Source: Selaginella moellendorffii
Taxonomy: Eukaryota > Plantae > Lycopodiophyta
DNA: 64,000 nucleotides
Reading direction: 5' to 3'
Assembly: GCF_000143415.4 (NCBI RefSeq)
Contig: NW_003314289.1
Location: forward strand, 1,792,293-1,856,292
Shown: positions 1,441 to 42,759 of the stretch, piece after piece
Layout of the letters: each line of letters begins with the position of its first letter
Numbering within the stretch: the stretch's first letter is position 1
Position numbers and translations under genes: made by a program
Notes under the pieces: model-generated
Told to the model about the DNA's origin: nothing
Database searches by the model: none
Seen by the model: the letters and a program-made list of their open reading frames with translations, nothing else

Positions 1441-3455
1441 CTGTTGTTTGGATACTATAATGTTATAAATAGTATAATGAATAATAATACATGTTTTTCT
1501 GCCAAAGGGTAAATGAATTTCTTCTGTTTTGCATAGGTAGCGAGGTGGTGGGAAACCCCTTGGTTGGCAGGGAAATCTCTCTCACTCCAAGGGTCCTGGG
1601 GAACTGGTCCCATCTCAAGACAGCTCTTGGGTGGTGCTAGAAGTTTGAGTGGAGCTGGCGTGTGGACATAGGCCATGTTCCAAGGATACCTCATTGTTGG
1701 ATCTACTAGAGCTTGTAGCCACACTCATGAATCTCTGTGAAGGCACAGCACTCCTACCCCAAGCGGTGCAACTCGCAGGAGGCAGCGCTCCAAAGCTGGA
1801 GCCTGCAGTGAGACGAGCTGCAGCTTGAAGCAAGTCCACTCCAGCTCACGCTGGATTTGCCATTGTATGCAGCGCAATTGCCTAAGATCTCAGCAATAAC
1901 ACCGCTCACATTGAGAATCCTTGCACCCTGATCTAGGCCGTGCTGAGCTCCTCATCCAGAGTTTCTGAGGCAGCACACAGTATGAGACCATGTAAGCCTT
2001 GCAAGGATCCATGCCTCACAAGTGTAGCCTCCCAGTGTGTGTCCAGGCCACTGACATTCCTATATTGCATAGCAGAAGGACAAAACTTTTTCTCCAACAG
2101 CATTGAGAGTGTTGTCTGTGGCATGAGGTCGAGCATACTGGGGGCCCCAGTCCTCAATGCAAACGAGGCCACTCCTCATGTCCCTGGGAAGCCCCACTTG
2201 ACTTTTGATTCCACATTGAGTGCTTCACATACCTGGCATCTTGATGACACAAAATGTCTGCTATTTCCATGGAAATCCAGTCATGGGTGTTTAGCACAGC
2301 CATACGTTACAACCCCCAGGTGTGTATGCTTTCAAGGTATATTCATAGTAATTTAATATAAGCCACACAAACAAAACCATGTGAATGTTTATGAATAAAA
2401 TTGTTAATCATGAGGAGGTACATGATGTACGGCCAAGAAAAAGAATGAACAGGTCAGCCATTGGCAGCGGCATGACTTTACCTAGTATGCAGTCGTTCGA
2501 ATTTTGGCTAGCGAGTGGTCTGAGTCGTACAACGATGGAGCTGAATGCAAGGGTGAAGCACTGGTATGATGGAGGCAATGGTGGCAAAGCACGGGCCTAC
2601 AGTACATATCTCGCTCTGATAGTTTGCGCTGGAACTCCTTTACCATGGTAATGTATACTTGAACTATGTAAGTCAACAAAGAAGAAAACAAATACCAGGG
2701 AAGCAAGCTCCATAAAAAGAAGAGAATCTGATGTGAATCCAAACTTGCCATAGAAAGTCAGGCCATCTAATTCTGACAAGAACCATAGTTACATTTTATA
2801 TATCAGACGGTTGAGACTTTGCATAAAGAAAACAGGTAGCTTCTTGCTGCTTTCCTGCTCTTAAAACACGTGTTTAACGCAAAACAAGTAGCAAACATTC
2901 TTTGACCACAAATTCCACTTGACTATAGATGACGTATGACATTGTCCTGCAAAAACCTTTGTTTCAAAAAGAAGGCTTGTCAAACACATCCTAAAGTTCT
3001 CAAGTTGCCAAAGACCACGTCTCGTCCTTTTGGAGACAGGATGGCCTACGCTGGAGCGAAGCATGTAACGTGTTGTGCAGCTTGAGCCGCTTACAAAATT
3101 GGACTGAAATATACACAGCGTAAAACTTAGGCGGTGAATAGTGTCAGTATTGAGGAATTTTCAATCCAGGGCTTCTTCTTCACAACATTGATCCAGAGAA
3201 GGAGCGGAAGTAAAAGATTGTCAAAGTTAGTAGTGACCCCTATACTGCTGTAATGGTATTCATATATTTGTAGTAACAGAGGAAGCACTATACAGTCAAC
3301 AATATGTTCTCTATTTCTTCTGTTTGTACGGTTCATTTTTAGAATTCCAGATGGAGACAAAGAAGTGAGAGAGAAAATGGTATTTACTCTTTTTAAAATT
3401 TACAAAAAAATGGGCCTGAGGGAATTTACCCAGAATCAAAACCGTCTATCACATA

Positions 3456-5022
3456 TTAGCAGACACTGACCTGCCTGTAGTGGCTGGGTCTGCCGTCTGG
3501 ATATGTCACCAGCGTCATTCTGTAGCCTTGACGCTTGAGAACCAACTGTTGACTCAACTCGAGCTGCTCACAGGCCATTTCTGTGGCCTGCATACTCGAA
3601 CCTCGGATGACTTTGGAGTGCAGCAGCATGAACTTGCCATCTGCCAGCTCCACCACCGCGTTGTGCCATGGTGTTGGGATGTGGAAGTTCTTCTCCTCGG
3701 AAGAACGCTGCGCTGCCACTAGAGAGGAATGGATGATGTTGATGCCATACTTGGGACCTCTGTTTGGATGCGGGTGGATGGAAATGCGCAGCTGCAAAGG
3801 GAAGAGCCACTCCACCATGGCCGAGTATGCACGGTTCCTGAGGATCATGAGGAAGGCAACCTGGCTGCACAGCTTCTTCTTGGCCGACTTTGACGGGAGA
3901 TTCTTGCAGCTCTTGTGTTCGTACAAGTCCTCGAGCATGAACCTGGAGAAGCCACGATATAGATTGCGTGTCTCCGGGTCCTCCTTGATCTCCTTGGTGA
4001 CGGTTGACTCGTCACATCCAAACAAGCACATGAGAGCTCGCCTGGCATTCTCTGCATTGGCGGTGAGCTCAGTCGCAACGGGATGCTCCACGGTGGTGTT
4101 GGAGATAAGCTTTGCAATGTCTTTGTCACTGTGGTTGTCCAGCAGAAACTCATCCAGGCGAAAGAAATTGACAAGGCCGGGATACAGATTGTGTGCCATC
4201 TCCCAAAACATCTCGCCGTAAGAATCCACAGCAGCGTCGTCCGAGCCGACGAGATCAGAGAAGACATGGCCATCCGAGGCGACGTTGTAGTGCACGCCTG
4301 GAGCATACACGGCCTTGATGAGATCCGCAACAATCTTCATGGAATGGATGGCCAGCTCCTCGGCCTTGTCCGGGCACTTTCCCAGAGTCTTGTCGGGATT
4401 GCACGACTTGACTGGAAATGCGGGCAAGACGAACTCGAGTGGAATGTTTCTTGCGACGTGGTACCTCACCTTGTCCGCAAACCTCTGCTTGCCCCCACTT
4501 GTGAACCACTGGTCGTGCTTTGGGAAGTGGATGTAATTCTTCTCGATGATGTCCACAACTTGGGAGGTGATGTCGTCCACCTCTTGAGGTGTGTGCGAGC
4601 TGAAGGGCTCCAGAAGGCAATCTCTGGTCATGACGCCGTTGTCCAGCAGCAGAGAGGCCAGATAGCTCATGCTCTCGCTGTCCTCCTCCTGGAGATTGGG
4701 ATCCTGGATGAAAACCACGCCCTCGAACCCGCTCCCAATGTATCTCTCGTAGACGGGTGGCTGTCCACTCCTGGTCAGCTGCTGCTCCAAGCATGGAAAT
4801 GGTGTACTTGTTCATCTCTGGAGCAACTGAGCGTGTGGCCTGCTTAGCCGCCTCTAAATCTTCCGCCTTGTCACTCGCGACCATGGAGGAGAACAAGAAA
4901 TCACACTTTGCTGCTAGTACTGGGACATGCCTGGACGCAGATTGTGAGACGAAGCCAATCTCACCACTCTCTCTGTGGATGTACAGGAATGCAATCTTGT
5001 CCTTTGGATATGAACTTGCCAT
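3456..5022 (-). pseudogene. DIT1/PvcA-family isocyanide synthase, copy 1 (intronless; +1 frameshift at ~4755-4757, real or sequencing error)
   Basis: Motifs LPAFPVKSCNPDKTLGKCPDKAEELA, SDGHVFSD, LYRGFSRFMLEDL, RNRAYS, LRISIHPHPNRGPKYGI, HIPTPWHN. AGACGGGTGG here versus AGACGGTGG in copy 2 splits the N-terminal ORF (ATG 5022) from the 3456-4790 ORF. Confidence 0.88.
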
Positions 5023-5121
5023 GGGTGTTATGAAGAAAAAGAGAAAATCTCAAATTTCAGGCTAGAGGATGGAAGATTGCAGACTGGGATCGATGAATTG
5101 TCTGGGTTTCCCTGGTTGGGC

Positions 5122-5128
5122 TTTTATA
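5122..5128 (-). promoter_or_regulatory. Putative TATA box (TATAAAA) of ICS copy 1
   Basis: GGTATAAAAGCCC on the minus strand ~100 bp upstream of the ATG; conserved in copy 2. Confidence 0.5.
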
Positions 5129-5466
5129 CCAGGAAGCCGCCCGCCTTCCCGGTACCTACGCGCTTGACTGGAAAATTCTCAAACGTGGGCTGGGAAAATA
5201 GAACGCGATTGACAAAGTCACACAACTGACCATGAAGCTTCACACGTAGTTTCTTGTTTGTTTCTTTTGACAACGTTTGATTCTTTTCACAACCATGTAG
5301 AACAAGGAATCTTTTGTCAAGGCCTGGTTTTTCTTCTCTTCTTCTTTGTGTACAAATGCTAGTCTCTAGAGAATGGTGTCTCAAAGAATCTCTATAATTC
5401 GGTTCCAGATTTTCTTACCTTTGCATGAATGCTTCTAGTATGACACAGCAATCGTTTGTTGCATCT

Positions 5467-6509
5467 TCAAACTGGAGCAGCCTTGCCTCTAAAACTGATC
5501 AAAGGATTTGCATTTGCCCACACTGCAGCATCCTTGTAGCCCAGGACATAGAGCTCATCTAATACTGCATCTCCAGCCAGTTCTAAAGCCCAGTTTAAAA
5601 GCTGCAAAACAGTCGAGAAATTTACTAAATACCTTTATTATTTCTGTACCTGTCTTGGAGAGGCTCGGTTGTCGGGATTACAGTCCGGGCTGATACCCAC
5701 TGTGTCTTGAAGACCGAGGCGCTTGGCAGAAAAGGCACACACTCGTACCTGTGTAAAAGCAAAGCGAAAGTTTCAGAAGCCAACTCAAATCTTACCAAGT
5801 GACACGAAAGAACCGTTGTTTCAGCAGCTGAAGGGGGCATGAAGAGTGTGAACCCGCCGTTGATGCACAGTCTGTTCTTGAAGACAGTAACAGGTCGTGG
5901 TGCTAGATAACTAAAAACCAGTCAATCTTCCATCTTAATGGAACGCAATAGCAAACTACTTACTTGGGAATGAAACACGACGTAAGCAAAGCGTTGATCA
6001 GATCTTCTTTGGAATCAAACTGGTCAACGAGCAGGCCTCTTGGTACTCGAAAGAGTTGCGTGATTGCAACTGCAAAGAGAAGTAGTGAACTTAGCATGAC
6101 ACAAGGGAGAGAGAAAAGAGACAGCTCCATACCTCTGATCCTCCCGCTCGCCTTAACGTGCGCGTCATCGGGCATAACTTTGTACAAAACTCTCCTCAGC
6201 ACAGCCTAGTGATGGAGACAATAAAGAGGAGCTCTGAGCAAACTAGACACAGACTCAGTACCTCGAGAGATCTCTCTTACCCCGAGCCTGAAAGCAGTCC
6301 CATTGGCACGACAATCTTGTGCTAGATCCTTGGTTGCGACCAGTGCGTCTTGCATGCTCATCCCTGCCACTACAACAGCATAAACGAGCGCTCCAGCCGA
6401 CGATCCAGCTAAAGGAGTATCCTCCTACGAAGATAGAAAAGCAGAAAATGGAGAAGAGTTGGAGCTCGATCGTACCGTGATATAGTTCCGCTCCATGAGG
6501 CACTTCCAC
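5467..6509 (-). pseudogene. Patatin-like phospholipase (PNPLA-type), 5'-truncated
   Basis: Spliced exons DTPLAGSSAGALV (GxSxG), DLAQDCRANGTAFRLG, PRGLLVDQFDSKEDLINA, YLAPRP..NRLCINGG (DGG changed to NGG), GISPDCNP, LNWALE. The 5' end is replaced by gypsy integrase sequence at ~6510. Confidence 0.8.
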
Positions 6510-9500
6510 TTTACCAATTCGAGCCTCAATCTCATAAGGCCCTGCAAACCTGCGTAAGGAACTCAAGATCAATTCATTTACAGGAATACATGCATTTTTA
6601 CCTTTGGGTCAACTTCTAGCTGATCCCACTTGGTAGCCTGAGGTTCTTGGTGTTCAACCACACCTTCTCCCCATAGCTCACCCATTGATAACTTCCCATG
6701 GACTCACCCCTATGCTCGAATGTGGTGAGTTGTTATAACATATTTCTGTAAGTCCCAAATGACTTACCCAATTGGTCTAGTCTCCCGAGACATAACATTG
6801 CAAATAATCCTCCAACTGCCTATTCACCCTTTCCGGTTGCCCGTCTATCAAGAAGTGTTAGTGCCATCAAACTTGACTTAATACCTATTACCTGTCTATG
6901 GGTGATAGGCTATGCTGAATTTCAACTTGGTGCAATATTGTTCCAAGAGTGTTCTCCAGAACCTATTGGTGAAGATCTTATCTCGATCTGAGATAATCTC
7001 TTCTGGCCTTCCCCGCACTTGAACCACTTGTTCAAAGAACAGCTTTGCCACACCTTTTGCATCCACTTCTGTTGTGGTGGGTATGAAATGTGCCATCTTC
7101 GAAAATCGATCCACCACCACAAATATCGCATCGAACCCCTTGCTTGGGGGGAGTCCCGTGATGAAGTCCATCATAAAACATTTCCACGGACGATCTAGAA
7201 TTGGGATGCTTTGTAGCAAGCCCCCACTAGCTTTAGTCACGGCTTTGACCTGCTGATATGTTAGACATGTCTTTACATAGTCTTGGACGTCCTTAGCCAT
7301 ATCTGGCTAGTGGTACTTCTTCTTGAGTAAGCCCATTGTCTTGGGCACTCCGCCGTATCCCACAAAAGGTCTGTCATGACACTCTTTTAAGGCTACCTTC
7401 CTTAGTTCCCCTTCTGGAACATACACCCTCGTTTGCTTGTAATATATGAGTCTATTGCGTTCCACATAGCCCGTTTTCTCTTCCGTTGGCAGCTCACCTC
7501 TCTGGTGAGCTTCCCATGCCTCTAGATTCCTCAGCAACACTTCTTGTGCTAGACCATCGTTCTTGTATGCAGTCCGCATATCATCCCAAAAGGTTGTTGT
7601 TGTGTTGGATATTGCCAACTTTAAGCTCGCTTTTCAACTAAGCGCATCTGCCACGATGTTGCTCTTCCCAAGCTTGTACAGAATCTCGCAATCAAACTCA
7701 GCCAAAGCATTGGCCCACCGACCTTGTTTTCCCCTCAGGCTGGGTTGTGACAAGAAGTGTTTCGTTGCCACATTGTCTATATAAACTTTAAAGTGTCTCC
7801 CAAGGTAGTGTTGCCACTCCTTGAGCGCCTTGACCACCGCAAACAATTCCTTCTCATGGGCAGGCCACTTCCATTAAGCCTTATCCAGCTTCTTCGAGAA
7901 GAACGCTACTGGATGGTTGTCTTGCTTCAAAATTGTGCCCAACGCAAAGTCTGAAGCATCCGTTTCTACCTCAAAGTCATTACCAAAGTTTGGTAATGCT
8001 AACATGGGAGCCTTCCTCAACTTCCCCTTGAGGTGGACGAATGCTGCCTCGCATTCTACTGTCCATACCATCTTCCCTTTTCCCGTTTGGTTTGTTAAGG
8101 GTAGGGCTACTCTAGAATAGTGTCTGATAAACTTTCAATAGTAGTTGCATAGCCCAAAGAATGCCCTTAACTCGTGTACATTCGATGGTCGCTCTCAATC
8201 CTGGATCGCTTGGACCTTCTCAGGGTCCACCTTGAGCTCGTCCTTGCCCACCACATGCCCGAGAAACTTTACCTCTTGTTGAGCAAAGTCACATTTGCTC
8301 TCTTTAGCATATAGCTGGTGTTCTTTTAGTTTCTCAAACACCTTCGTCAAGTGTTTGGTATGCTCCTCTAGCATTTCGCTATACATCAGGATGTCGTTAA
8401 TATAGACGACCACAAAGTGATTCAGATAGGGTACAAAGATATGGTTCATCAATGCCGAAAATGTTGCCGGCACATTGCATAGCCTGAAGGGCATCACCAG
8501 AAACTCGAAGCTCCCATACCTCATTTGACAGGTTGTCTTATCAACATCTTCTTCTGCTACCCTGATCTGGTAGTATCCTAACCTTAGGTCAATCCTTGAG
8601 AAGTATTTTGCCTTTCCCAACCTATCGAATAGGTCCTCAATCCTTGGCAAAGGGTACTTGTTCTTCTTTGTATACTTGTTGAGCAATCGGTAGTCTATGC
8701 ACATGCGCATAAATCCATCTTTCTTTTTCACAAATAGCACTGGCGCCCCATACGGCGACTTGCTCAATCTAACATACCCTTTGTCCACCAACTCCTCTAG
8801 TTGGCGCTTGAGCTCCGCGAGTTCTTTTTCATTCAAACGATAAGGGGGACGAACCACCGCCTTAGCACCCTCGACTAGCTCAATTTTATGCTCTATCGGT
8901 TGTGTGGGGGGCAACCCCGCTGGTAGCTCCTCCAGCATGGTATCCTAGAATTGGTCCAACACCCGCTGGATCACTAAAGGTACTTCTTTCGTTCCTGTCT
9001 TTTTGTCACTTCTCACCGAGAGTAAGCACAAAAATGCAGCCTTGGTCCCGTTAGTGAGTTGTCCTCTCGTGGACACCAAGTTTAGGTATGAATCTTTGGC
9101 CTTGCATTACCCTACCTTTAAATCCTGGGCCTCCACCCTAGATCTTCTTCCTTGGGCATTTGCTATTACCACAAGGTTCCTACCTTGTCCATGTAGAGCT
9201 ACCATGAACCGATTGAACTAATCCATCCCGAAGATCACATCAAATCCCGCCATGTCCAATATAGTGAAATCCATGTCTACTTTCCAAGTCCCTACTTCGA
9301 CTCTCACTTGTCGAAGTACCTCATCGGTGCTTTGGCTACCTTGAACAAACTATATAGTCCTTGGTTCGCCCAGCCGCTGCACTGTTAGTCCGACTTGCCG
9401 GATTATGTCTGCAGCCACAAAATTATCCAAAGCACCCGTGTCAATAAGGATCTTAATAAAGCTACCTCCGAGCTTCTCTCGGAGGGCTAATAGATGTCGC

Positions 9501-11897
9501 GAATGACTCTCTACCAAAATTCCTCGTGTAATGAGTAACTTTGAGCTAGGGACTCGATTACATACCTCAGTTTGGACTTCAATGGCCATATTGGCTCTGG
9601 CCTTCTTCGAGTAGGGACATTCCCTTGAAAAGTGTCCCACTTCACCGCAGTTGTAGCATATGTTATTTCCCACGCTGCTAAATTACTTGACCTTCTTATC
9701 CATGGGTTTGTCTCTTTTTGCTTGACTCCCCCACATACTTGCTCGCTGGCCACTGGATTCGCCTTTCCGGAACCCCGAGGACTCATTCTTAGATAAACTT
9801 TTCTTGAATTTCCCTTTGCTATATATTTCCCTTGGTTTGGCCCCTTTCCTAAACGTGGACCCCGACCCTATCGTGTTCCCCTTTCATAGGTTATCATTGA
9901 AATGCACCTTGATAGCCGCATCCAACACTTCTTTGTAATTGGTCAGGTTCCAATGCATCACCTCGCCACGAGCCCAGATTTGCAAGCCCGATATGAAGGC
10001 ATGGAATGCATCCATATCCCTCATGTCCGTGACAAGTATCCTCTTTGCTATAAACCCATTCACATACTTCTGAATGGTTCCGGTCTGCTTCAACCTACTT
10101 AGCTAGTCTCTTAGATGCAGAGTAGCATTCGGAGGAACGTAAGTCGCGCAAATTCTCGCCTTCATCATGTCCCAAGTGGCCACCGGTCCTTTGTTGGCCT
10201 CTGTCGTTCTCCACCAAGACATGGCATTATCTTCCAAGTATGGTTTTGCACATGGGACCTTCTCCGAGCTCGGTAACGGCAATGCTCGAAAATAGTCCTC
10301 CATATCATAAAACCAATCCTCCACCACCTTATAGTCGTTCACTCCCTTGAAGACCGGTGGGGGCTTTGGTTTGTACTTGGGAACTACCTGAGGGATTGAT
10401 TCCACTTCGGTCTGTTCAACCTTGTTTGGTTCTGCCTCAGTCCCTACCGAAGGGTGTGCACCTTCTATGCTGCCAGCATCCACAGTCTTTCGCTTTTTTT
10501 TTTCTGCTTCTTGTCATGCTTTAGCTTGCATACGAGAGTCTCCAGCAGGGCATTGGTCTGTGCCAATTGTCCTTCTAGAACGTCCAATCGAGCCTTGGAC
10601 GACCGCACCTCACCACCAGACTCTTGTTTGGAAATTTCCTCACTAGAGTCCTCCTCATGCAAGGATTCCTCATCCATTGCCTTTTGTTCGACCGGAGGCT
10701 CTAGCTCTGGAGGAGGTTCCGTCTCTGTCTTGGTTCGTTTACCTACCTTTGCTATCTCCCAGCAATCCGCCTCTATCCTTTGCTAGAACTGAGGAAAAGG
10801 CTCCGATACCAAATTGTAAGCCATAAATTTTTCCTTTCCAATTTATTTTTTCCAATTTAGGGGGATTGGGAGAGATTTGGGAATTCGTGGATGGATGGCT
10901 AACGCTCCGTTGCTCATGTAGTGAGTAGCTGAAACCAAGTAGGACCAAGTAAGAGCTGGTACCATAGGTGGGAATCTTGGCGAGGGAACTTAGCAAAAGT
11001 CAATGTAGTGCTGGACTCTGGGTTAGATTAGACTTAAGGTTTGGCTACACTCCCCGCAGGCACAAGCAGCCAAGCACACCAAGCCTCTAAGTTCCTAACA
11101 TGATCATGGGACCCTTTATATCCCAAGTCTTGGGTGCAACACTTGCTTTGGGACGCCGGGGCGAAACACTGTGGCCTAACAGCCTGGTATGGGTACCTCT
11201 ACCCCCCCCCCACTTCCATCCCGAAGGAAGGCACAAGCCCCTAGGAAGGGCGAGGACCAATGAGCCGCATGGTACTCAAATGGGGCACCACTCCACATGA
11301 GCCGGGAGCACTGCAATCGGTTTCACTTTCGGGAGTGGGAGCTACTCTTGAGCACTTCTTGGGGTGGCCCTCCGGCACCACCCAAGTCCCTACTCACTCC
11401 CACCCAAGGCCCCTCAGCCCTAGTATCAACCTCAAGTCAGTTTAGAAGCACCACTGGAGAGTTCCTTCAAGATTGGTTCCTAGACCTCACTATCCCTACT
11501 ATACTTTTGGAACCCCCTGCAGCCCCCCCCCCCCCCCCCCCCCGGGAGACGCACGCTTTGGGGGCTTTCACCCCTTGACCCGTATTAGTACTCGGACTCG
11601 GTCTCGGACTCGACCTCGGACTCGATCTCGGACCTGACTTCGGACTCGGTCTCGGACTCGATCTCGGACTCGATCTTAGACCCGATCTCGAACTCGACTT
11701 CAGACTCGACCTCGGACTCAGTCTCGAACCCGATTTGGATCTCGGACTCGGTCTCCGATTCGGCCTCAGACTCGATCCCGGACTCTATCACGAACTCGGT
11801 CTCAGAGTCGGTCTTGGACTCGATCTTCGACTCGGTCCCATCCGATGAACTCTTTGTCATTTTGGTCATGCTTTCGGGGATCCTTTAGCCTACGACA
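6510..11897 (-). mobile_element. Ty3/gypsy LTR retrotransposon (family A), 3'-truncated and decayed
   Basis: gag (9884-10677), CCHC knuckle CYNCGEVGHFSREC, protease LIDTGA, RT (8195-8938; YINDIL), RNase H (ETDASDFALG), integrase (MDFITGLP, SDRD, GPY at ~6540). PBS TGGTATCGGAGCC at 10799-10811; 5' LTR ~10815-11897. Many stops. Confidence 0.92.
11590..11840. repeat. 12-bp-period tandem repeat (CTCGGACTCGRT-like) inside the LTR
   Basis: Repeating units are directly visible; a related array lies at 14600-14960. Confidence 0.9.
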
Positions 11898-11899
11898 TC

Positions 11900-12490
11900 T
11901 TGGCGAGTTGGTTCCTTATACAGTGATGCAATTTAACATTCATTTTCAAGCCTTTTGTTTTGTGTAAAGCCAAATAATGCTTTTCACTTGGTACAATGTT
12001 TGTGAGACATTGCTTTTTCCACTTTTTATTGCTTGTGTTTTAACTCCACTTTCTGTGGGATATGGTCCTGTTTCAATGGAGGTTAATGTTATTGCTTCCC
12101 GAGTTCATAGACAAGGGCAATGATGTGGTCATGGCCATGATGTTCATTGTTGAACGTGTGATAAAATTAGTCATGTTAGCATTGGCATCCTCCATTTCCT
12201 GAGTGGAGACCTTGATGTTAGCAACAACTTGTTGGTGCTGTTGCAGTGGAAGGTTAAAACATCGAGATGCTTCTAAGAAACAAAAAGTCATGCAAGTAGT
12301 AGATGGTCCTTGTGTGAATAAATTTGTGACCTTTCTATTTTTCTTTCGGGAGTATTATCAAAGGGTTCATTTGGCACAAGTTCATTTCTCCTATTATTTT
12401 ATCTGTGTTAATTAATACAAGCTTAAGTTTATCTTTTATTGCTTAGTTTGTAGCCACATATTGCTATCTACAATTACGTCATGTGGCAGA
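11900..12490 (+). mobile_element. Degenerate gag/protease fragment of gypsy family B
   Basis: Reverse-complement similarity to 29520-30240. Confidence 0.75.
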
Positions 12491-12501
12491 GCTAGTCTAG
12501 T

Positions 12502-13020
12502 CATAGAGCTCATCTAATATTGCATCTCCAACCGGCTCTCAAGCCCAGTTTAAAAGCTGCGAAACAGTCAAGAACTTAGGTATGTACCTTTTAACTTCTT
12601 ATTGTTTGGAGAGGCTCGGTTGTCAGGATTACAGTCCAGGCTGATACCCACTGTGTCTTGAAGACTAAGGTGCTTGGCAGAGAAGGCGCATACTCTTACC
12701 CGTGTAAAAGCAAAACAAAAGCTTCAGAAGCCAAAACAAAAATCTTAGTGAGTGATACGAAAGAACCATTGTTTCAGTAGCTGAAGGGGGCATGAAGAGC
12801 GTGAACTTGCCGTCGATGCACAGTCTATTGTTAAAGACGGTAACAGATTGTGGTGCTAGATAACTAAAAACCAGTCAAGCTCCCATCTGAACGGAATGCA
12901 AGAGCAAATTGCTTTAAAACACAATGTAAGCAATGTGTTCATCAGATCTTCCTTGGAATCAAATTAGTCAACAGGCAGGCCTCTTGGCCCTCAAAAGCGT
13001 TGCATGATTGCAACTGTAGA
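12502..13020 (-). pseudogene. Second patatin-like phospholipase fragment (duplicate of 5547-6075)
   Basis: Direct repeat with many transitions; encodes LCIDG and GISLDCNP. Confidence 0.8.
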
Positions 13021-13029
13021 GAGACAGAT

Positions 13030-16000
13030 GCTAACCATTTCATCTAGAATTTTTGTACAAGAGAATGGTCTAATCCTTGGAGGTTTAATTACTTTGGTGG
13101 ATTGCCCACTAATATTCTTTATATTTTGGCAAATCACTTGAGATAATCATACACTTCCCAATGAAGATAGCAATCATCTTTTGGTGCTCAAATTATTATA
13201 CTATTGCAACATTGTCCCTTGGAGACACTTGGGAAACTCATGTAAATGCTGAATATCATCCCAAAAATCAACCACACACATGTAGATTGGAGCATTCTCC
13301 TAAACATTTTCAAATGCATATTTGAACATGTCAATGATTATGATGATGTATTTTAATAATTGGTTTGTCTTCATCAAGGACCATCTGAGTTAATGATGCA
13401 ATTTAGCATCTATTTCTAAGCCTTTTGCTTTATGTAGAGCCAAATAATACTCTTTGCTTGGCATAATGTTATAAGACATCACTTCTTCTTCTCTTTCTAT
13501 GGGAGATAGTCCTATTTTAATAAAGGTTGATGCTACTGCTTCTCGAGTTTATAGACAAAGGCAAGGATGTGGTCATGGTCATGATGTCTGCTGCTAGGCA
13601 TTATAAGCGACTAATTTTTCCATTCTACTTTAATCATTTAACCACACTTTTAACTATTTGGAAGAGTCTCACTCACAACCTCCATAAGTCCTATTTAGGA
13701 CTTGGGGATATGCTAGCCTCGTGAATGGTATATATGCCACTTAACCTTTGCACTTGGTTTAAGTGGTATATATTTCCGATCTCATAACTAACACCCAAAG
13801 GTACTATTGATATATCAACTTATTATACTAAGGCCATGCCCATTCACCTTTATCATATCAATAGTCCAAGACCACCTACATCACGATTCTATCTCTCAAA
13901 GATTAAGCCATCCATCTATGAATGGTCATCCCTTGACCACACTTTAGCACCCTTAAGATGCCCAGAAACATGCAGAACACCCTTCCCCAATGTCCCTTCT
14001 TCTGTCCCCACTAAGTGCTTCTTCATCCAAAGCCATACTCACCAACCCCACCACTAAGTCAAAGCCCAAAAGCCTGACCACTAAATCCCATTGTCCTTTG
14101 GGACTTCCTCACTATGTGATTGTGTCTTTGGTCACTACACTAAAGGACTGTTCCTCTTCATTTTTATAGTCTGGGACTTTAGGACAACATTTCGAAACAC
14201 CACAACCCTACACGAGCTTCATAGGTACTCTCCCCACCTTTCGCCCTTAAGTGCCTAACCATGTGGCTAGAGTGAGGTCCTAATGAGCCACACCAGGTAT
14301 CTAAGTAGGTAGTGCCACTCACACCTAGATTAGGAGTATTGACCATTCGATCTCTCGGGGGAGCTAGAGCCGGCTTTTAAACACTTCACCAAGCTACCTT
14401 GCTTGTCTATTTGTATTCACTCAAACTTTGAACTCCTCAGTGGATATACCATCACCCAACACATGGGTATAACCTTCCTTGGTCACACTAACCTTTCCTA
14501 GCCAAACTGATTCCATTAAAGTCCTCCCCTTACTATACTTTTGGAGCTCACTAAACCCCCTAGGGTTTAGGAGATGAACACTTTGGGCTTTCACCCTTGG
14601 ACTCGAACTTGGACTTGGACTCAGACTCGGTCTCGATTTTGGTTTCAGTCTCGGTCTCGGTCTCGGTCTCAGTTTCAGTCTTGGTCTCGATCTTAGTCTC
14701 GGTCTCAATCTCTTTCTCAGCCCAACCTTAGACTCTATCTCAGGTTCATCTAAGACTCGACCTCGGACTCCATCTCAGTTCCATCTTAGGTCCATCTTGG
14801 ATCCATCTTAGGTCCATCTTAGACTCCATCTCGGGTCCATATTAGACTCCATCTCGAATTTATTTCGGGTCCATATTAGACTCCATCTTGGGTCCATATC
14901 AGACTCCATTTTGGACTCCATCTTGAACTCTATCTTGGGTCCATCTTGGACTCCATTTTGACACTTCCACGTGTCATGTATTGGTCATTTTGTGTCCCTT
15001 TCCTAAAAACTTACTTACTGCTTACTTCGTGCTCGTTCCTCGAGCACTTCATTGGGATTTCCACTCCTACTTTCGACTGTCCAAATCAAAGCTTTTAGTC
15101 CAAATGTGTTATGCTTATTTGGCTTCTGCTTTGGCCACTACCATGTGGCACCCTTTCGGCTCCACTTTAGGGATTAGGGATTTGTGACACTTTGGGGTTT
15201 AGGGATTTGTATCTCATAAATGTGTGATGAAATTGGTCATGTTAGCATTTTCTAGATTAGCAACCTCTATTTTCTGGGTGGAGATCTTGGTGTCAACAAC
15301 AACCTATTGATGTTGCTGCAGTGGAAGGTCAGGACACCAAGATGTTTTTGAGAAACAAGGAGTCGTACAAGTAGTAAAGGGTCCTTGTGTGAATAAATCT
15401 GTGACCCCTCCATTTTTCTTTCAGGAGTATTATCAAAGGGTTTATTTGGCATAAGGTCATCCAGTATTTACTTTCCAAGCTCATTTTTATAATAAAATGT
15501 CTCCTATTATTCTATCCATATTAGTTAATATAAACTTAAGTTTATCTTCTATTGCTCAGTCTATGGTCACATGTTGCTATCTACATTTATGTTATGTGGC
15601 AAAATTAGTTTTCATTCTTTATAGCAACAGTCGTACATATGCATGTGCATGAAATAAGGTAGACTTAATTATGCGTGTGGGAGATCTCGAGCTTAAACTG
15701 TAGTTGTTGCAGATGCTATTGAGTCAAGTTTTTGCCCTCATCCTTTATATGGATTGGTTACAGCACAATCATATCGAGTGTGACTTTACTACTTTTCCCA
15801 TTGTCTTATACTTCTTTATATTTTTTGTATTCCTCTCATTTTTGTTCTTTTTTGTCTTTTTGCCTTTATCACTTTTATCACTTCATTATTTCCTCCTATG
15901 TTTCTGTTTTGTTCCTCTATTCCCTCTTTAGATCCATTCAATGATTTTTGTGTTGTAGTGGTTGACTGACTCATGAAGGAGTATACCAATCTCTTTGAAT

Positions 16001-16046
16001 TTGACCTGTCATCTGGGGCAAAATTGCAACACGTCATTTTATTCCA
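13030..16046 (+). mobile_element. Degenerate gypsy family B gag/protease interrupted by an LTR-like insert
   Basis: 13030-13600 and 15222-16040 are contiguous pieces of the reverse complement of ~29070-30560. Confidence 0.75.
13602..15189. mobile_element. Nested solo-LTR-like insert related to the family A LTR
   Basis: Starts TATAAGCG (degenerate TGTAAG) and ends TGTGACA. Shares GGGCTTTCACCCTTG plus the CTCGGACTC tandem array with the 10815-11897 LTR. Confidence 0.6.
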
Positions 16047-17154
16047 CAAAACCATGTGAATGTTTATGAATAAAATTGTTAATCATGGAGGAGGTACATG
16101 ATGTACAACCAAGAAAAAGAATGGACAGGTCAGCTATTGGCAGCGGCATGACTTTACCTAGTATGCAGTTGTTCGAATTTTGGCTAGCAAGTGGTCTGAG
16201 TTGTACGACGATGGAGCTGAATGCAAGGGTGAAGCACTAGTATGATGGAGGTGATGGTGGCAAAGCACAAGCCTACAGTATATATCTCGCTCTGATAGTT
16301 TGAGCTGGAACTCCTTTACCATGGTAATGTATACTTGAACTATGTAAGTCAACAAAGAAGAAAACAAATACCAGGGAAGCAAGCTCCATAAAAAGAAGAG
16401 AATCTGATGTGAATCCAAACTTGCCATAGAAAGTCAGGCCATCTAATTCTGACAAGAACCATAGTTACATTTTATATATCAGGCGGTTGAGACTTTGCAT
16501 AAAGAAAACAGGTAGCTTCTTGCTGCTTTCCTGCTCTTAAAACACGTGTTTAAAATGATGCATAAATACCGTATAACGCAAAACGAGTAGCAAACATTCT
16601 TTGACCACAAATTCCACTTGACTATAGATGACGTATGACATTGTCCTGCAAAAACCTTTGTTTCAAAAAGAAGGCTTGTCAAACACATCCTAAAGTTCTC
16701 AAGTTGCCAAAGACCACGTCTCGTCCTTATGGTGACAGGATGGCCTACGCTGGAGCAAAGCATGTAACGTGTTGTGCAGCTTGAGCCGCTTACAAAATTG
16801 GACTGAAATATACACAGCGTAAAACTTAGGCGGTGAATAGTGTCGGTATTGAGGAATTTTCAATCCAGGGCTTCTTCTTCACAACATTGATCCAGAGAAG
16901 GAGCGGAAGTAAAAGATTGTCAAAGTTAGTAGTGACCCCTATACTGCTGTAATGGTATTCATATATTTGTAGTAACAGAGGAAGCACTATACAGTCAACA
17001 ATATGTTCTCTATTTCTTCTGTTTGTACGGTTCATTTTTAGAATTCCAGATGGAGACAAAGAAGTGAGAGAGAAAATGGTATTTACTCTTTTTAAAATTT
17101 ACAAAAAAATGGGCCTGAGGGAATTTACCCAGAATCAAAACCGTCTATCACATA

Positions 17155-18787
17155 TTAGCAGACACTGACCTGCCTGTAGTGGCTGGGTCTGCCGTCTGGA
17201 TATGTCACCAGCGTCATTCTGTAGCCTTGACGCTTGAGAACCAACTGTTGACTCAACTCGAGCTGCTCACAGGCCATTTCTGTGGCCTGCATACTCGAAC
17301 CTCGGATGACTTTGGAGTGCAGCAGCATGAACTTGCCATCTGCCAGCTCCACCACCGCGTTGTGCCATGGTGTTGGGATGTGGAAGTTTTTCTCCTCGGA
17401 AGAACGCTGCGCTGCCACTAGAGAGGAATGGATGATGTTGATGCCATACTTGGGACCTCTGTTTGGATGCGGGTGGATGGAAATGCGCAGCTGCAAAGGG
17501 AAGAGCCACTCCACCATGGCCGAGTATGCACGGTTCCTGAGGATCATGAGGAAGGCAACCTGGCTGCACAGCTTCTTCTTGGCCGACTTTGACGGGAGAT
17601 TCTTGCAGCTCTTGTGTTCGTACAAGTCCTCGAGCATGAACCTGGAGAAGCCACGATATAGATTGCGTGTCTCCGGGTCCTCCTTGATCTCCTTGGTGAC
17701 GGTGGACTCGTCACATCCAAACAAGCACATGNNNNNNNNNNNNNNNNNNNNNNNNNNNNNNNNNNNNNNNNNNNNNNNNNNNNNNNNNNNNNNNNNNNNN
17801 NNNNNNNNNNNNNNNNNNNNNNNNNNNNNNNAGCTCAGTCGCAACGGGATGCTCCACGGTGGTGTTGGAGATAAGCTTTGCAATGTCTTTGTCACTGTGG
17901 TTGTCCAGCAGAAACTCATCCAGGCGAAAGAAATTGACAAGGCCGGGATACAGATTGTGTGCCATCTCCCAAAACATCTCGCCGTAAGAATCCACAGCAG
18001 CGTCGTCCGAGCCGACGAGATCAGAGAAGACATGGCCATCCGAGGCGACGTTGTAGTGCACGCCTGGAGCATACACGGCCTTGATGAGATCCGCAACAAT
18101 CTTCATGGAATGGATGGCCAGCTCCTCGGCCTTGTCCGGGCACTTTCCCAGAGTCTTGTCGGGATTGCACGACTTGACTGGAAATGCGGGCAAGACGAAC
18201 TCGAGTGGAATGTTTCTTGCGACGTGGTACCTCACCTTGTCCGCAAACCTCTGCTTGCCCCCACTTGTGAACCACTGGTCGTGCTTTGGGAAGTGGATGT
18301 AATTCTTCTCGATGATGTCCACAACTTGGGAGGTGATGTCGTCCACCTCTTGAGGTGTGTGCGAGCTGGAGGGCTCCAGAAGGCAATCTCTGGTCATGAC
18401 GCCGTTGTCCAGCAGCAGAGAGGCCAGATAGCTCATGCTCTCGCTGTCCTCCTCCTGGAGATTGGGATCCTGGATGAAAACCACGCCCTCGAACCCGTTC
18501 CCAATGTATCTCTCGTAGACGGTGGCTGTCCACTCCTGGTCAGCTGCTGCTCCAAGCATGGAAATGGTGTACTTGTTCATCTCTGGAGCAACTGAGCGTG
18601 TGGCCTGCTTAGCAGCCTCTAAATCTTCCGCCTTGTCACTCGCGACCATGGAGGAGAACAAGAAATCACACTTTGCTGCTAGTACTGGGACATGCCTGGA
18701 CGCAGATTGTGAGACGAAGCTAATCTCACCACTCTCTCTGTGGATGTACAGGAATGCAATCTTGTCCTTTGGATATGAACTTGCCAT
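17155..18787 (-). CDS. DIT1/PvcA-family isocyanide synthase, copy 2 (intronless, ~521 aa inferred; spans an N gap)
   Basis: Open from MASSYPKDKIAFLY (18787) through LPAFPVKS and SDGHVFSD to the gap, then from MCLFG...IHPHPNRGPKYG..IPTPWHN to the stop. The 100-N gap corresponds to 33 in-frame bp in copy 1. Confidence 0.88.
17732..17831. other. Assembly gap (100 N)
   Basis: Run of N. Confidence 1.
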
Positions 18788-19265
18788 GGGTGTTATGAGA
18801 AAAAGAGAGAATCTCAAATTTCAGGCTAGAGGATGGAAGATTGCAGACTGGGATCGATGAATTGTCTGGGTTTCCCTGGTTGGGCTTTTATACCAGGAAG
18901 CCGCCCGCCTTCCCGGTACCTACGCGCTTGACTGGAAAGTTCTCAAACGTGGGCGATTGCTAGCTTTGGGAAGAAAACGTGATTAAATTTTGGCCACATG
19001 ATTGATATCATCAGAAAGGAAGTTTGATATGTAATTTCCTCTCGTGAGCTTCCTACCAAGTTTCGCTTGACAACCACGTAAAACAAGATCTTTGATATCG
19101 TCAAGATTTTCTATACATTTTTCTACAGCGTCGCCTACCAGCGTTGATTGTCGGGTCAAAGCTTTTCTCTTTGGCGGTACTGTGATAGTAAATGGGTGAG
19201 ACCATAAAAACCTCTTCTTTGTGAGCTCTGTGTTTTGTGGAAAGTGGAAACACCATTGATCGATC
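18788..19265. promoter_or_regulatory. 478-bp divergent intergenic region between ICS copy 2 and PDR copy 1
   Basis: Head-to-head ATGs. TATAAAA on the minus strand at 18886-18892; CATAAAAA on the plus strand at ~19203; W-box-like TTGACT at ~18928 and GGTCAA at ~19155. Confidence 0.55.
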
Positions 19266-22200
19266 ATGGAGGCTGCAATGACGGGTGACCGTTTTTCCGA
19301 GAGTGGATCGCTTCGTGTCGACGACGAGGAGGCTCTCAAATGGGTTGCGTTGGAAAAGCTTCCCACGCACAATCGTCTCAGGACAGCCCTCCTCCAGAAT
19401 CTCGGGGAGGATGGACAGGAAATTGCTTATCAGGATGTCAAGAAGCTCGGATTCCAAGAGAAGAGGGGCCTCATCGAAAAGCTGCTGGGCGTCCAGGAAT
19501 CAGAGGACGAGATCTTCGTCAAGAGGCTCCGGGAAAGAATCGATAGGCAAGTTCCAAGTTCTTACAATTTGTCAATCTCTGTGGAAGGGTTTTTTTTCTT
19601 AGTTCTTTAGTTCTTTGTTTGCAGGGTTGGAGTCGAGCTTCCCAAAATCGAAGTCCGGTTTGAGGGTCTCACTGTTGAGGCTCAAACTCATGTGGGAAAG
19701 AGAGCTCTTCCCACGCTCTACAACTTTGTTGTCAATGGGGTGGAGAGAATTCTCGGCTTGCTTCATCTCATTTCATCAAACAAGCATCCACTCAAAGTCT
19801 TGCGCAATATCAGTGGCATCATCAAGCCCTCCAGGTTTGTAGTGTTTCCGTCAATTCGCAAGAACTCCAATGAACTAGAACTCATCTTACTTTCTTTCAT
19901 TGAGACAGGATGACTTTGCTCTTGGGTCCTCCCAGTGCGGGCAAAACTACACTCCTTCTTGCACTCGCTGGGAAACTAGACAAGTCACTTAAGGCAAGAA
20001 CAAGCTATCAGAAGTTCTCATCCTCGAAAAAATATGAAGAATTTTCTCTACAGTTTTTATTTATCTTCTTTTTTCTTTTCATACAGGTTTCCGGTCGCAT
20101 CACCTACAATGGCTCTGATATGACAGAGTTTGTGCCGCAAAGAACTTCTGCCTACATTAGCCAGCATGACTTGCATATGGGAGAACTGACCGTGAGAGAG
20201 ACCTTTGATTTTTCTTCCCGGTGCCAAGGTGTTGGAAGCAGACATGGTAATATAATCTTCATCGCTATTGCATCACAGCTACTGACTATCGCCAGCTCTT
20301 TGTTCTCTAAAACAGAAATGGTTATGGAGCTGGCAAGAAGAGAAAAGAATGCCAAGATCAAACCCGACCTTGCTATTGATGCTTACATGAAGGCAAGGAA
20401 CTTAACAAAAATGAATCAACTTTCTTATGTTTTCTGTGGAAACAGGCTTCTGCTATCAAAGGTCAGGCAACCACCATTGTCACAGATTACATCTTGAAGG
20501 TATGAGTGTCATTTTCTTAGCTAGTACCTTAGTTTAATATCATTGATTTTCTTTCTTTCCTTTCTTTTCGTCCTGTAGATCCTAGGATTGGATATCTGCG
20601 CTGATACAGTTATTGGAGATGCAATGCGCAGAGGTATCTCCGGTGGACAAAAGAAGCGTGTTACCACTGGTTAGTCCTAAAACAATTGGATTGCAGAATT
20701 GCTTACAAGTTCTTTCCTAAACTTTCAGGAGAGATGCTGGTCGGGCCAGCCAAATCTCTTTTTATGGACGAGATTTCAACTGGTCTTGACACCTCCACCA
20801 CGTACCAAATCGTGAAAAGCTTGAGGCAGTCGGTTCATGTCTTGGATGCTACTGTGATTGTGTCTCTGCTACAACCAGCCCCGGAAACTTACGAGCTCTT
20901 CGACGACTTGATCCTCCTGGCCGAAGGCCAGATTGTTTATCAGGGCCCGCGGGATCTTGTGCTCGATTTCTTCGACTCCCAGGGATTCAAGTGTCCTGCA
21001 AGGAAAGGAGTCGCGGATTTCCTACAAGAAGTCACGTCGAGAAAAGACCAAGAGCAGTACTGGGCTGACGAGGAGAAGCCTTACGAATACGTATCCGTAG
21101 AGAAATTCTCAAGCGCATTCCGCCAGTTTCATGTTGGTCAGAACTTAGCCGAGGAGTTTTCGACGCCTTTTGACACGACTAAATCTCATCCAGCGGCACT
21201 TGTGACGAAGAAATACGGCCTCGGCAAGTGGGACATTTTCAAAGCAGTCCTGGCGAGGCAGATGCTCCTGATGAAAAGGGACTCTTTTGTCTATGTCTTC
21301 AAGTGTACACAGGTACGTAGATGTTGATAATCTCGAGTCACTAAAGCAGAATTCGACTTTGCAGCTCTTTATCATGGCCGCGATCACGATGACAGTTTTC
21401 TTACGGACAAATATTCATGCCAACAACGTAAATGATGCGACACTTTACATGGGAGCATTGTTTTTTGGTCTGGCTACTATCATGTTCAGTGGTTTCGCTG
21501 AGGTCTCCATGACAATCCAACGCCTCCCAGTGTTTTTCAAGCAAAGGGACCAAAAGCTGTTTCCTGCCTGGGCATACTCAATCTCTACAATAATCACAAG
21601 GCTTCCACTCTCGCTTCTGGAATCAGCAATCTGGGTGTTCATGACATACTACGTTATCGGCTTCGCTCCCAGCGCTTCAAGGTTTGTAAAACTTCTTACA
21701 AGGCTTGTTGATATCTCTAAGACATTTGTTAACTTTTTGACAGACTCTTTCGCCAGTTCTTGCTTCTGTTCTTGGTCCATCAGATGGCAGGAGGACTTTT
21801 CCGATTTATCGCTGCACTCTCACAGAAAATCGTCATAGCAAACACGTTTGGCTCGTTCGCGCTCTTGGTCATCTTTGCGCTGGGTGGCTTTGTTCTCTCA
21901 AGAGGTAAAAGACTTGTTTCTCACAGTTTATAGCATCTAAGTTTCTTCCTTTTCATTTTGTTCCAGATAGCATACATCCTTGGTGGATCTGGGGCTATTG
22001 GTCGTCTCCAATGATGTATGGGCAAAACGCACTTGCTGTCAATGAGTTTAGTGCAACAAGGTGGCAGCGGGTGAGTCTTATTTAAAAACTAGCTCTTGAA
22101 GCTCAGAAGTTTGATCACCTTCTCTCTTACCTGTAGATGGATGGGAATGCCACGATTGCAAGAAACTTCCTACAGTCCCGAGGACTCTTTGCTGATGGAT

Positions 22201-41883: not shown

Positions 41884-42104
41884 AGCGATTTCTCTATGAC
41901 TCTTCCTCAAATTCTTCCAGGACCCCTTTGCAAATGTAAATACTACCCAGCGAAGGGAGTTACATGTAAACAAAGATCCAATTTTTCCATAGAACATCGC
42001 CACGAGAAGGATTTCTCTTGCTCGAACGAGGTGGCAAATCCAGTATATAGCATTTAAGTAGAAACCCTTGACGTTTATTGGGCCTTTAGAGTGAGAGCGC
42101 TGCT

Positions 42105-42651: not shown

Positions 42652-42759
42652 GAGATCTAGAAACGGGTGAGACGATGCAAACCAACTTTCTGGATTAAAA
42701 GAGATCTTAGTTCGTGTCACTCGCTAACGCTTTGCTAGAGCTCAGTCTCAAAAGATATC

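What the first reader, a model, noticed from the sequence alone, without database searches (positions are those of the whole stretch)
3456..18787. Fungal-type DIT1/PvcA isocyanide synthase genes inside a plant genome
Seen: an intronless ~521-aa protein with the family motifs LPAFPxKSxN..K.LG..PDKAEELA, SDGHVFSD, LYRGFSRFM.EDL, RNxAYS, LRISIHxH.NxGPKxGI and HIPTPWHN, amid unambiguous intron-containing plant genes. Known: this family (yeast Dit1, Pseudomonas PvcA, Aspergillus XanB/CrmA) converts an amino-acid amine to an isocyanide using a ribulose-5-phosphate carbon, and is considered bacterial/fungal. From recall, the motif wording and long N-terminal extension resemble ascomycete Dit1 more than PvcA. 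Inference: horizontal transfer from a fungus, which could give this plant an isocyanide or N-formyl-amino-acid chemistry (metal-chelating defence compound or spore-wall precursor) that I do not know to be described in plants.
Basis: partly seen in the sequence, partly recalled or inferred. Interest (0 to 1): 0.95.

Follow-up and report, generated by a model that had tools for sequence, protein, structure and literature searches.

The report
Fungal-type isocyanide synthase genes in Selaginella
This spikemoss (Selaginella moellendorffii) window holds two near-identical, transcribed copies of a fungal Dit1-type isocyanide synthase gene; the family has 20 or more members, was most likely taken from an early-diverging fungus, and is already listed in databases and one 2018 paper, but what it makes in the plant is unknown.

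Summary
Two 99%-identical DIT1_PvcA (PF05141) genes lie on the minus strand, at 3456-5022 and 17155-18787, in Selaginella moellendorffii nuclear DNA. Neither gives an uninterrupted 521-aa ORF as assembled. Copy A has one extra base at 4755-4757. Copy B's 100-N gap hides 33 nt (11 codons), so the frame break there comes from the placeholder.

RNA contigs from four runs cover only the gene, end in poly(A), show no intron, and all lack copy A's extra base.

The protein has the yeast Dit1 architecture, the PvcA/PIsnA fold, and all 44 family-conserved residues. Paralogues show dN/dS of 0.13-0.20.

Two ML trees put a monophyletic Selaginella clade beside chytrid fungi and outside crown Ascomycota. 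AU tests cannot fix the exact position. Two other paralogues keep a phase-1 intron at the same codon as chytrid and Aspergillus genes.

Transfer from a fungus is well supported. An ascomycete donor is not the best fit.

The presence is not new. RefSeq names these genes "spore wall maturation protein DIT1", and Lim et al. 2018 list 23 Selaginella gene ids ("one species of moss"). The scan also flagged other copies on other DNA of this genome. Enzyme activity and product are untested. No Dit2 or Dtr1 partner lies nearby.

The parts
3456..5022 (-). ICS copy A coding region, Dit1 type and intronless; a 1-base insertion at 4755-4757 shifts the frame
   Evidence: RNA contigs of 4 runs all lack the extra base
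3366..3455 (-). 3' UTR of copy A, up to the poly(A) addition site
   Evidence: an X2 contig ends at 3366 with 25 loose T on the + strand, which is a poly(A) tail on the minus strand
5023..5079 (-). 5' UTR of copy A; RNA contigs reach 5074-5079
   Evidence: depth table and contig pieces
5122..5128 (-). TATAAAA box, conserved upstream of both copies, about 45 nt before the furthest RNA contig end
   Evidence: read directly from the sequence; function inferred
17155..18787 (-). ICS copy B coding region; frame intact where read, interrupted by the assembly gap
17732..17831 (.). Assembly gap of 100 N that stands for 33 nt (codons 320-330)
2370..5190 (.). Duplicated segment A: gene plus about 1 kb downstream and 170 bp upstream. 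The low end is approximate
16046..18954 (.). Duplicated segment B, 13.7 kb from segment A
56068..57429 (+). Degenerate ICS pseudogene with stops and frameshifts
   Evidence: tblastn of P0001, 37% identity over 485 columns with in-frame stops; 83% DNA identity to L002
63735..64000 (+). Start of a further ICS copy that runs off the window; it carries a stop and deletions
   Evidence: tblastn
19910..25607 (+). Context: ABCG/PDR transporter gene with introns, head-to-head with copy B
   Evidence: ABC_tran and ABC2_membrane hits on separate ORFs
5345..6400 (-). Context: expressed, spliced plant gene just upstream of copy A
   Evidence: joints with CT..AC ends on the + strand, which are GT..AG on the minus strand, skipping 48-75 nt in up to 3 runs

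Best explanation
These are nuclear genes of Selaginella moellendorffii. They belong to a tandemly amplified family of Dit1-type isocyanide synthases. The family has at least 16 RefSeq models and 23 JGI gene ids across both assembled haplotypes.

Shown: the family descends from one ancestor that groups with fungal Dit1, closest to chytrids. It has since diversified under purifying selection. It is transcribed as polyadenylated mRNA. It keeps every residue that is conserved across fungal and bacterial isocyanide synthases.

Inferred: a single genomic-DNA transfer from an early-diverging, chytrid-like fungus into the Selaginella lineage. One fungal intron survives in older paralogues and was lost in the clade that holds the window's copies.

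Inferred from the family's known chemistry (PvcA/IsnA/Dit1): the enzyme condenses the alpha-amino group of L-tyrosine, or another aromatic amino acid, with C2 of ribulose-5-phosphate to give an alpha-isocyano acid. That product either hydrates to the N-formyl amino acid or is tailored by plant enzymes. No fungal Dit2 or Dtr1 partner came along.

Both window copies are imperfect as assembled. One is a placeholder gap. The other is a 1-base insertion that may be an assembly error or a young pseudogene.
For: Identity of the genome: 99% to XP_002975629.2, and 99.6% DNA identity to GL377593.1.

Family and fold: Pfam E 5e-83. PDB sequence hits to PIsnA at 2e-28 and PvcA at 1e-25. AF2 model with pLDDT 84 and TM 0.83-0.88 to 9dh4/3e59. 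Full-length TM 0.78 to yeast Dit1. All 44 positions conserved in at least 93% of 44 fungal and bacterial proteins are kept, apart from two conservative changes.

Selection: dN/dS 0.13-0.20 at dS 0.35-1.0 among paralogues.

Expression: contigs of 4 runs from 4 studies cover 3338-5079 only, with zero depth on 2400-3203. They show a poly(A) tail at 3366 and no intron in the gene, apart from one X2 contig whose 3' end is replaced, probably a paralogue transcript. All have the intact frame.

Phylogeny: Selaginella is monophyletic at 100/100. It groups with chytrids at 97/92 and 92/93. Eukaryotes separate from bacteria at 100/100.

Intron: there is a phase-1 GT-AG intron in the codon after SDGHVFSDL in P0005 (57 nt, with an in-frame stop) and P0006 (55 nt). 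The same codon and phase carry an intron in 4 chytrids and in Aspergillus. Removing it restores the exact proteins.

Plant integration at other loci: the neighbours include PPR-DYW, CesA and BAHD genes.
Against: AU tests do not reject Selaginella as sister to all fungi (p 0.16 and 0.46) or as sister to Ascomycota (p 0.34). All sampled chytrids share a 1-residue insertion after KSxN that Selaginella lacks.

Other lycophytes could not be searched. S. moellendorffii proteins in the database carry no Logan source, so plant read sets are probably not covered. Oomycete and amoebozoan ICS proteins were not in my trees.

No activity, substrate or product data exist. No read evidence was obtained for the P0005/P0006 introns or across copy B's gap. 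Neither window copy is an uninterrupted ORF as assembled. The contigs laid also differ from both copies at other sites, so the window copies' own transcription is not shown.
Confidence: 0.75

Rival explanations
1. Vertical inheritance. A Dit1-type gene was present in an early eukaryote and survived only in fungi, a diplonemid and Selaginella.
For: AU tests allow Selaginella to sit outside all fungi. A diplonemid transcript (Namystynia) has the same architecture and the C-terminal DGRPSHY motif. The shared intron is equally compatible with common ancestry.
Against: It needs independent loss in every other sampled archaeplastid lineage. No other plant appears among 1299 hits in 1.84 billion cluster representatives, as far as these could be identified. 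Lim et al. found a single plant species. Both ML trees place Selaginella inside fungi.
Confidence: 0.08
2. Contamination or chimeric assembly. The ICS genes are fungal DNA joined to plant contigs.
For: GC3 of the gene is 0.73, against 0.44-0.57 in neighbouring exons. An assembly gap lies inside copy B.
Against: Copy A is joined without any N to a spliced plant gene and to Ty3 elements. Paralogues lie on at least 8 scaffolds of 0.4-4 Mb, next to PPR-DYW, CesA and BAHD genes. The sequence is only 39-49% identical to any fungus. The introns are of Selaginella size, 55-57 nt. The sequence is present in runs of several independent studies.
Confidence: 0.02
3. The window's two copies are dead duplicates, and only other paralogues work.
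For: Copy A has a frameshift that truncates the frame after residue 89. All transcript contigs lack that base and also differ from both copies at other sites. Clear pseudogenes lie at 56068-57429 and 63735-64000. P0007 and P0009 are degenerate.
Against: Outside the single extra base, copy A differs from the intact GL377593.1 genes by 3 substitutions in the region compared and has dS = 0. Copy B is in frame wherever it is read. A 1-base error in a C run is a common assembly artefact.
Confidence: 0.2
4. The enzyme has changed function. The family keeps the fold but makes something other than an isocyanide in the plant.
For: No Dit2-type P450, Dtr1/MFS or OPT partner lies within 10 kb at six loci. 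The family expansion is large. No isocyanide is known from land plants (my own knowledge). Yeast Dit1's direct product is itself only proposed.
Against: Every family-conserved residue is retained. Purifying selection acts over the full length.
Confidence: 0.15
5. Direct bacterial origin (PvcA/IsnA type).
For: The family is abundant in bacteria.
Against: The split between eukaryotic and bacterial sequences has 100/100 support. The Dit1 N-terminal domain is present. The protein has eukaryote-specific insertions and a spliceosomal intron shared with fungi.
Confidence: 0.01

Closest known systems
Saccharomyces cerevisiae Dit1 (P21623), spore wall maturation protein
   Same: Same two-part architecture, an N-terminal domain plus the ICS core. 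The predicted structures align over residues 1-521 with TM 0.78/0.76. Same Pfam family.
   Different: Only 27% identity. Yeast DIT1 is paired divergently with DIT2 (a P450) and works with the Dtr1 exporter; no such partners lie near the Selaginella genes. Ascomycete signature residues (SDC, SIHAH) are absent.
Chytrid Dit1 homologues (Blyttiomyces, Cladochytrium, Phlyctochytrium, Powellomyces, Geranomyces)
   Same: Highest identity, 39-49%. Sister group in both ML trees. Shared motifs (SDL, SIHPH, FHIPTPWHN, C-terminal YPDGRPSHY). Shared phase-1 intron after SDGHVFSDL.
   Different: Chytrids carry 2-6 introns, against 0-1 in Selaginella. They have a 1-residue insertion after KSxN. They sit beside an OPT transporter, or beside a P450 with an MFS fusion.
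Bacterial isonitrile synthases PvcA (3E59) and PIsnA (9DH4/9DHM)
   Same: The catalytic core fold matches, TM 0.83-0.88 by target. All shared conserved residues are present.
   Different: The bacterial enzymes lack the roughly 140-residue N-terminal domain and two eukaryote-specific insertions. They are usually paired with a PvcB/IsnB dioxygenase. About 24% identity.
Aspergillus XanB / CrmA / IcsA / IcsB
   Same: Same ICS core.
   Different: These are fusions with dioxygenase or NRPS modules and align only from about residue 125-145. The Selaginella proteins are single-module Dit1-type.

Membership tests
DIT1_PvcA isocyanide synthase (PF05141) | Profile match above Pfam's gathering score over the whole domain | tested here: met
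   279 bits against a cut-off of 26.4, profile 1-269 of 273
DIT1_PvcA isocyanide synthase (PF05141) | PvcA/IsnA fold | tested here: met
   AF2 model pLDDT 84; Foldseek E 4.5e-21, TM 0.87 to 9dh4 and 3e59
DIT1_PvcA isocyanide synthase (PF05141) | Family-wide conserved residues (LPAFPxK..N, PDxxE, SDGxVFSD, R, F..D, R..A, P...RxSIH, K.G, TPWH) | tested here: met
   44 positions conserved in at least 93% of 44 non-Selaginella proteins. All are kept in copy A and P0001-P0006, except I to V and V to S/A
DIT1_PvcA isocyanide synthase (PF05141) | Forms an isonitrile from an amino-acid amine and ribulose-5-phosphate | not testable with these tools
   needs an enzyme assay
Fungal Dit1 subtype | N-terminal domain preceding the ICS core | tested here: met
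   Yeast Dit1 aligns to residues 1-521; bacterial and XanB-type enzymes align only from about 125-150
Fungal dit gene cluster (DIT1-DIT2-DTR1) | Adjacent Dit2-type P450 and/or MFS exporter | tested here: not met
   tblastx of Aspergillus and Cladochytrium P450, MFS and OPT genes found nothing in the window or in 5 other Selaginella loci with 10-kb flanks. Present in Aspergillus and Cladochytrium
Horizontally transferred gene (fungus to plant) | Recipient clade nested among donor lineages with support | tested here: inconclusive
   ML gives Selaginella + chytrids at 97/92 and 92/93. AU does not reject fungi as one clade without Selaginella, p 0.16 and 0.46
Horizontally transferred gene (fungus to plant) | Absent from the recipient's relatives | tested here: inconclusive
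   No other plant among the hits, and Lim 2018 lists one plant species. Coverage of other lycophytes in these databases is doubtful
Horizontally transferred gene (fungus to plant) | Physically integrated and expressed in the host genome | tested here: met
   Contiguous with spliced plant genes. Polyadenylated transcripts confined to the gene. Plant-specific neighbours at other loci

The most novel reading that the evidence does not exclude
Selaginella uses a fungus-derived, massively amplified Dit1-type enzyme family to make tyrosine-derived isocyanide or N-formyl metabolites. That would be the first isocyanide pathway in a land plant. Host enzymes do the tailoring, and export may go through the ABCG/PDR transporters that border the array. 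The products would serve in metal binding, antimicrobial defence or spore-wall cross-linking.
Probability: 0.4. Interest if true: 0.8.

Novelty: new member of a known kind. Interest (0 to 1): 0.55.

Why it matters
Isocyanide natural products are known from bacteria, fungi and marine animals. To my knowledge none is known from land plants.

Here a complete Dit1-type isocyanide synthase family is conserved, transcribed and strongly amplified in a model lycophyte. That predicts an unexplored branch of plant specialised metabolism. It is directly testable by expressing one intronless 1.6-kb gene.

It is also a clean case of fungus-to-plant gene transfer. One donor intron survives in some paralogues and is lost in others, which is useful for studying how foreign genes are domesticated.

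The presence of the genes was already catalogued, so the value lies in function and history, not in discovery of the sequence.

Tried and rejected
Literature. Ten full-text searches paired Selaginella with isocyanide synthase, DIT1, dityrosine, isonitrile and isocyanide, and also tried PF05141, DIT1_PvcA and PIsnA. None found a paper about the plant genes. The only mention found came from reading Lim et al. 2018. The structural paper for 9DH4 was not found, so no published list of catalytic residues was used; family-wide conservation stood in for it.

Donor resolution. Three AU tests were all non-significant.

Cluster partners. A tblastx search for P450, MFS and OPT genes found none. The only hits were the DIT1 C-terminus that my own query slice included.

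Excluded from the selection and conservation analyses: P0007 and P0009 are degenerate or mis-modelled, and the DGHVFSD motif is missing from P0007.

Neighbouring gene. Pfam found nothing on the largest exon-like ORF (5960-6202) of the spliced neighbour. My impression of a patatin-like motif there is from memory and untested.

Limits reached. Read laying is capped at one call, so there is no read evidence across copy B's gap or for the P0005/P0006 introns. Organism names in the run search are coded, so other Selaginella species could not be recognised.
Full report
**What is there.** ORF listing shows two minus-strand copies of one gene. Copy A spans 3456-5022 and copy B spans 17155-18787. A DNA alignment shows them about 99% identical from roughly 170 bp upstream of the ATG to about 1 kb past the stop. 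Pfam assigns both to DIT1_PvcA (PF05141). Copy A scores E 5e-83, 279 bits against a cut-off of 26.4, covering almost the whole profile.

**The gap and the frame.** I tested the gap first, as asked. Copy B's two flanks are collinear with copy A. They are also collinear with two gap-free copies on scaffold GL377593.1. tblastn maps residues 1-319 and 331-521 of the intact protein to either side of the gap.

The 100 N at 17732-17831 therefore replace 33 nt, or 11 codons. The apparent frame break comes from the placeholder length. I could not lay reads across the gap itself.

Copy A has a different defect: one extra C in a C run at 4755-4757. Copy B and both GL377593.1 copies lack it. It splits the ORF in two. 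The "521-aa protein" is thus a composite as far as this window goes, although it matches RefSeq XP_002975629.2 at 99%.

**Whose genome.** The best protein hits are Selaginella moellendorffii at 99%. The DNA is 99.6% identical to GL377593.1 of GCA_000143415.2, but not the same sequence. It is probably the other haplotype or another assembly.

The rest of the window holds intron-broken ABCG/PDR transporter genes, a protein kinase, a KUP potassium transporter and Ty3 retroelements. It has no other N run.

**Expression.** Contigs of four runs from four studies were laid on 2400-6400.
- They cover 3338-5079 only. Depth is zero on the 0.8 kb downstream flank (2400-3203) and close to zero on 5080-5213.
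- One contig ends at 3366 in a 25-nt poly(A) tail.
- No splice joint falls inside the gene. One X2 contig has its 3' end replaced, probably a paralogue transcript.
- All four runs lack copy A's extra base.
- The contigs also differ from both window copies at several sites, so several near-identical paralogues are transcribed. Copy A's own transcription is not shown.
- Immediately upstream, at 5345-6400, contigs show five to six joints with GT..AG ends on the minus strand, skipping 48-75 nt. These are typical short plant introns in an expressed neighbour.

**Family membership.**
- Sequence search of the PDB finds PIsnA (9DHM/9DH4, E 2e-28) and PvcA (3E59, E 1e-25).
- An AlphaFold2 model of the 521-aa protein has pLDDT 84 and pTM 0.86. 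It matches those structures with TM 0.83-0.88 by target.
- Against Swiss-Prot models, yeast Dit1 aligns over residues 1-521 with TM 0.78. Bacterial synthases and Aspergillus XanB, CrmA, IcsA and IcsB align only from about residue 125-150. The N-terminal domain is therefore the Dit1 type.
- Of 44 alignment positions conserved in at least 93% of 44 fungal and bacterial homologues, all are kept in copy A and in paralogues P0001-P0006. The only exceptions are two conservative changes.
- Pairwise dN/dS among four intact paralogues is 0.13-0.20, with dS from 0.35 to about 1.0. The family has been under purifying selection in the plant for a long time.

**Size of the family.** Cluster look-ups list at least 16 RefSeq XP models named "spore wall maturation protein DIT1", plus many JGI models, on at least 8 scaffolds. 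Several have consecutive accession numbers on GL377593.1. The window itself also holds a degenerate pseudogene at 56068-57429 and the start of another defective copy at 63735-64000. Earlier notes of this scan flag further copies 7 kb and 52 kb upstream and on another piece of the genome. I did not check those.

**Origin.** A word-indexed search of 5.8 billion clusters and a full HMMER scan of 1.84 billion representatives both gave chytrid fungi as the nearest non-Selaginella proteins, at 39-49% identity. The genera are Blyttiomyces, Cladochytrium, Zopfochytrium, Phlyctochytrium, Powellomyces, Geranomyces, Fimicolochytrium and Irineochytrium. Dikarya come next, and bacteria lie far behind. No other plant appeared. 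S. moellendorffii proteins there carry no Logan source, so plant read sets are probably not covered, and this absence is weak evidence.

An ML tree (LG+C20 PMSF, 53 sequences) gives these supports:
- Selaginella monophyletic: 100/100.
- Selaginella plus chytrids: 97/92.
- Ascomycota as a clade excluding Selaginella: 100/100.
- Eukaryotes against bacteria: 100/100.

A pruned 44-sequence tree agrees, with Selaginella sister to chytrids at 92/93.

AU tests are less decisive.
- Fungi as one clade without Selaginella is not rejected: p 0.16 and p 0.46.
- Selaginella as sister to Ascomycota is not rejected either: p 0.34.
- All sampled chytrids share a one-residue insertion after KSxN that Selaginella lacks.

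I therefore regard a fungal-type origin as well supported. A chytrid-like donor is the best estimate but unproven. An origin within crown Ascomycota is excluded.

**A shared intron.** The window's copies, P0001 and P0004 are intronless. The genes for P0005 and P0006 each have one intron, of 57 and 55 nt. It is GT-AG, phase 1, and lies in the codon right after SDGHVFSDL. The P0005 intron holds an in-frame stop, and the P0006 intron is not a multiple of three, so both must be spliced. Removing them restores the exact annotated proteins.

The same codon and phase carry an intron in Phlyctochytrium, Powellomyces, Geranomyces, Cladochytrium and Aspergillus oryzae. This argues for a eukaryotic genomic-DNA source and against a bacterial one. 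P0006 and P0005 branch first in the trees, so it also implies intron loss on the way to the clade that holds the window's copies. I have no read evidence for these introns.

**Context.** In Aspergillus and Cladochytrium the gene sits beside a P450. In Cladochytrium it is also fused to an MFS transporter. In three other chytrids it sits beside an OPT transporter. tblastx with these partners found nothing in the window or in five other Selaginella loci with 10-kb flanks. Only the synthase is present near the plant genes.

Copy B lies head-to-head with an ABCG/PDR gene. The copies on GL377593.1 have copy A's type of upstream sequence instead, so this adjacency looks like an edge of the array and not a conserved pair.

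**Prior knowledge.** Lim et al. [quoted passage not shown] Their Table S1 lists 23 SELMODRAFT ids under Streptophyta. I found no paper on their origin, expression or chemistry in the open-access library.

**Verdict.** The transfer reading is supported with a corrected donor. The presence was already catalogued. Function remains open and is easy to test.

Noticed in passing
window 5345-6400 (-): An expressed gene with five to six short GT-AG introns (48-75 nt) lies directly upstream of ICS copy A. Contig depth reaches 236. The contigs differ from the window by small indels, so a paralogue may be the transcribed copy. Its identity is unknown; Pfam found nothing on its largest ORF.
   Followed up: partly
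window 56068-57429 (+) and 63735-64000 (+): Two further ICS-derived sequences on the opposite strand. One is a decayed pseudogene. The other is the start of a defective copy that runs off the window.
   Followed up: partly
window 19910-25607, 31426-32001, 36668-43218 (+): Several ABCG/PDR transporter gene segments lie in tandem. The first is head-to-head with ICS copy B, with about 1.1 kb between the start codons. This adjacency is not seen at the GL377593.1 copies.
   Followed up: partly
window 3456-4754 compared with neighbouring exons: GC3 of the ICS gene is 0.73, against 0.44-0.57 in five neighbouring exon ORFs. It could be expression-linked codon bias or a leftover of the donor. The sample is too small to decide.
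   Followed up: no
L004, L005, L006 (chytrid loci): In Phlyctochytrium, Powellomyces and Geranomyces the Dit1 gene is divergently paired with an OPT oligopeptide transporter. In Cladochytrium (L007) a P450 lies beside a Dit1-MFS fusion gene. These look like possible chytrid dit-like clusters.
   Followed up: no
L008:15331-20999: Two plant-type 2OG-Fe(II) oxygenase genes (DIOX_N + 2OG-FeII_Oxy) lie 4-9 kb from the intron-bearing paralogue P0005. Bacterial isonitrile synthases work with a different 2OG oxygenase (PvcB/IsnB), so the pairing may be chance.
   Followed up: no
L009, L010 and chytrid loci: Several intron positions of fungal Dit1 genes are shared between chytrids and Dikarya: after SDGHVFSDx, before RNxAYS, and within SIHP|H. 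They appear to be old in the fungal family.
   Followed up: partly
window 6896-10483 (-) and 26278-30266 (-): Ty3/gypsy-type retroelement ORFs (integrase, reverse transcriptase, protease and gag-like) lie between the ICS copies and beyond the first PDR gene.
   Followed up: no
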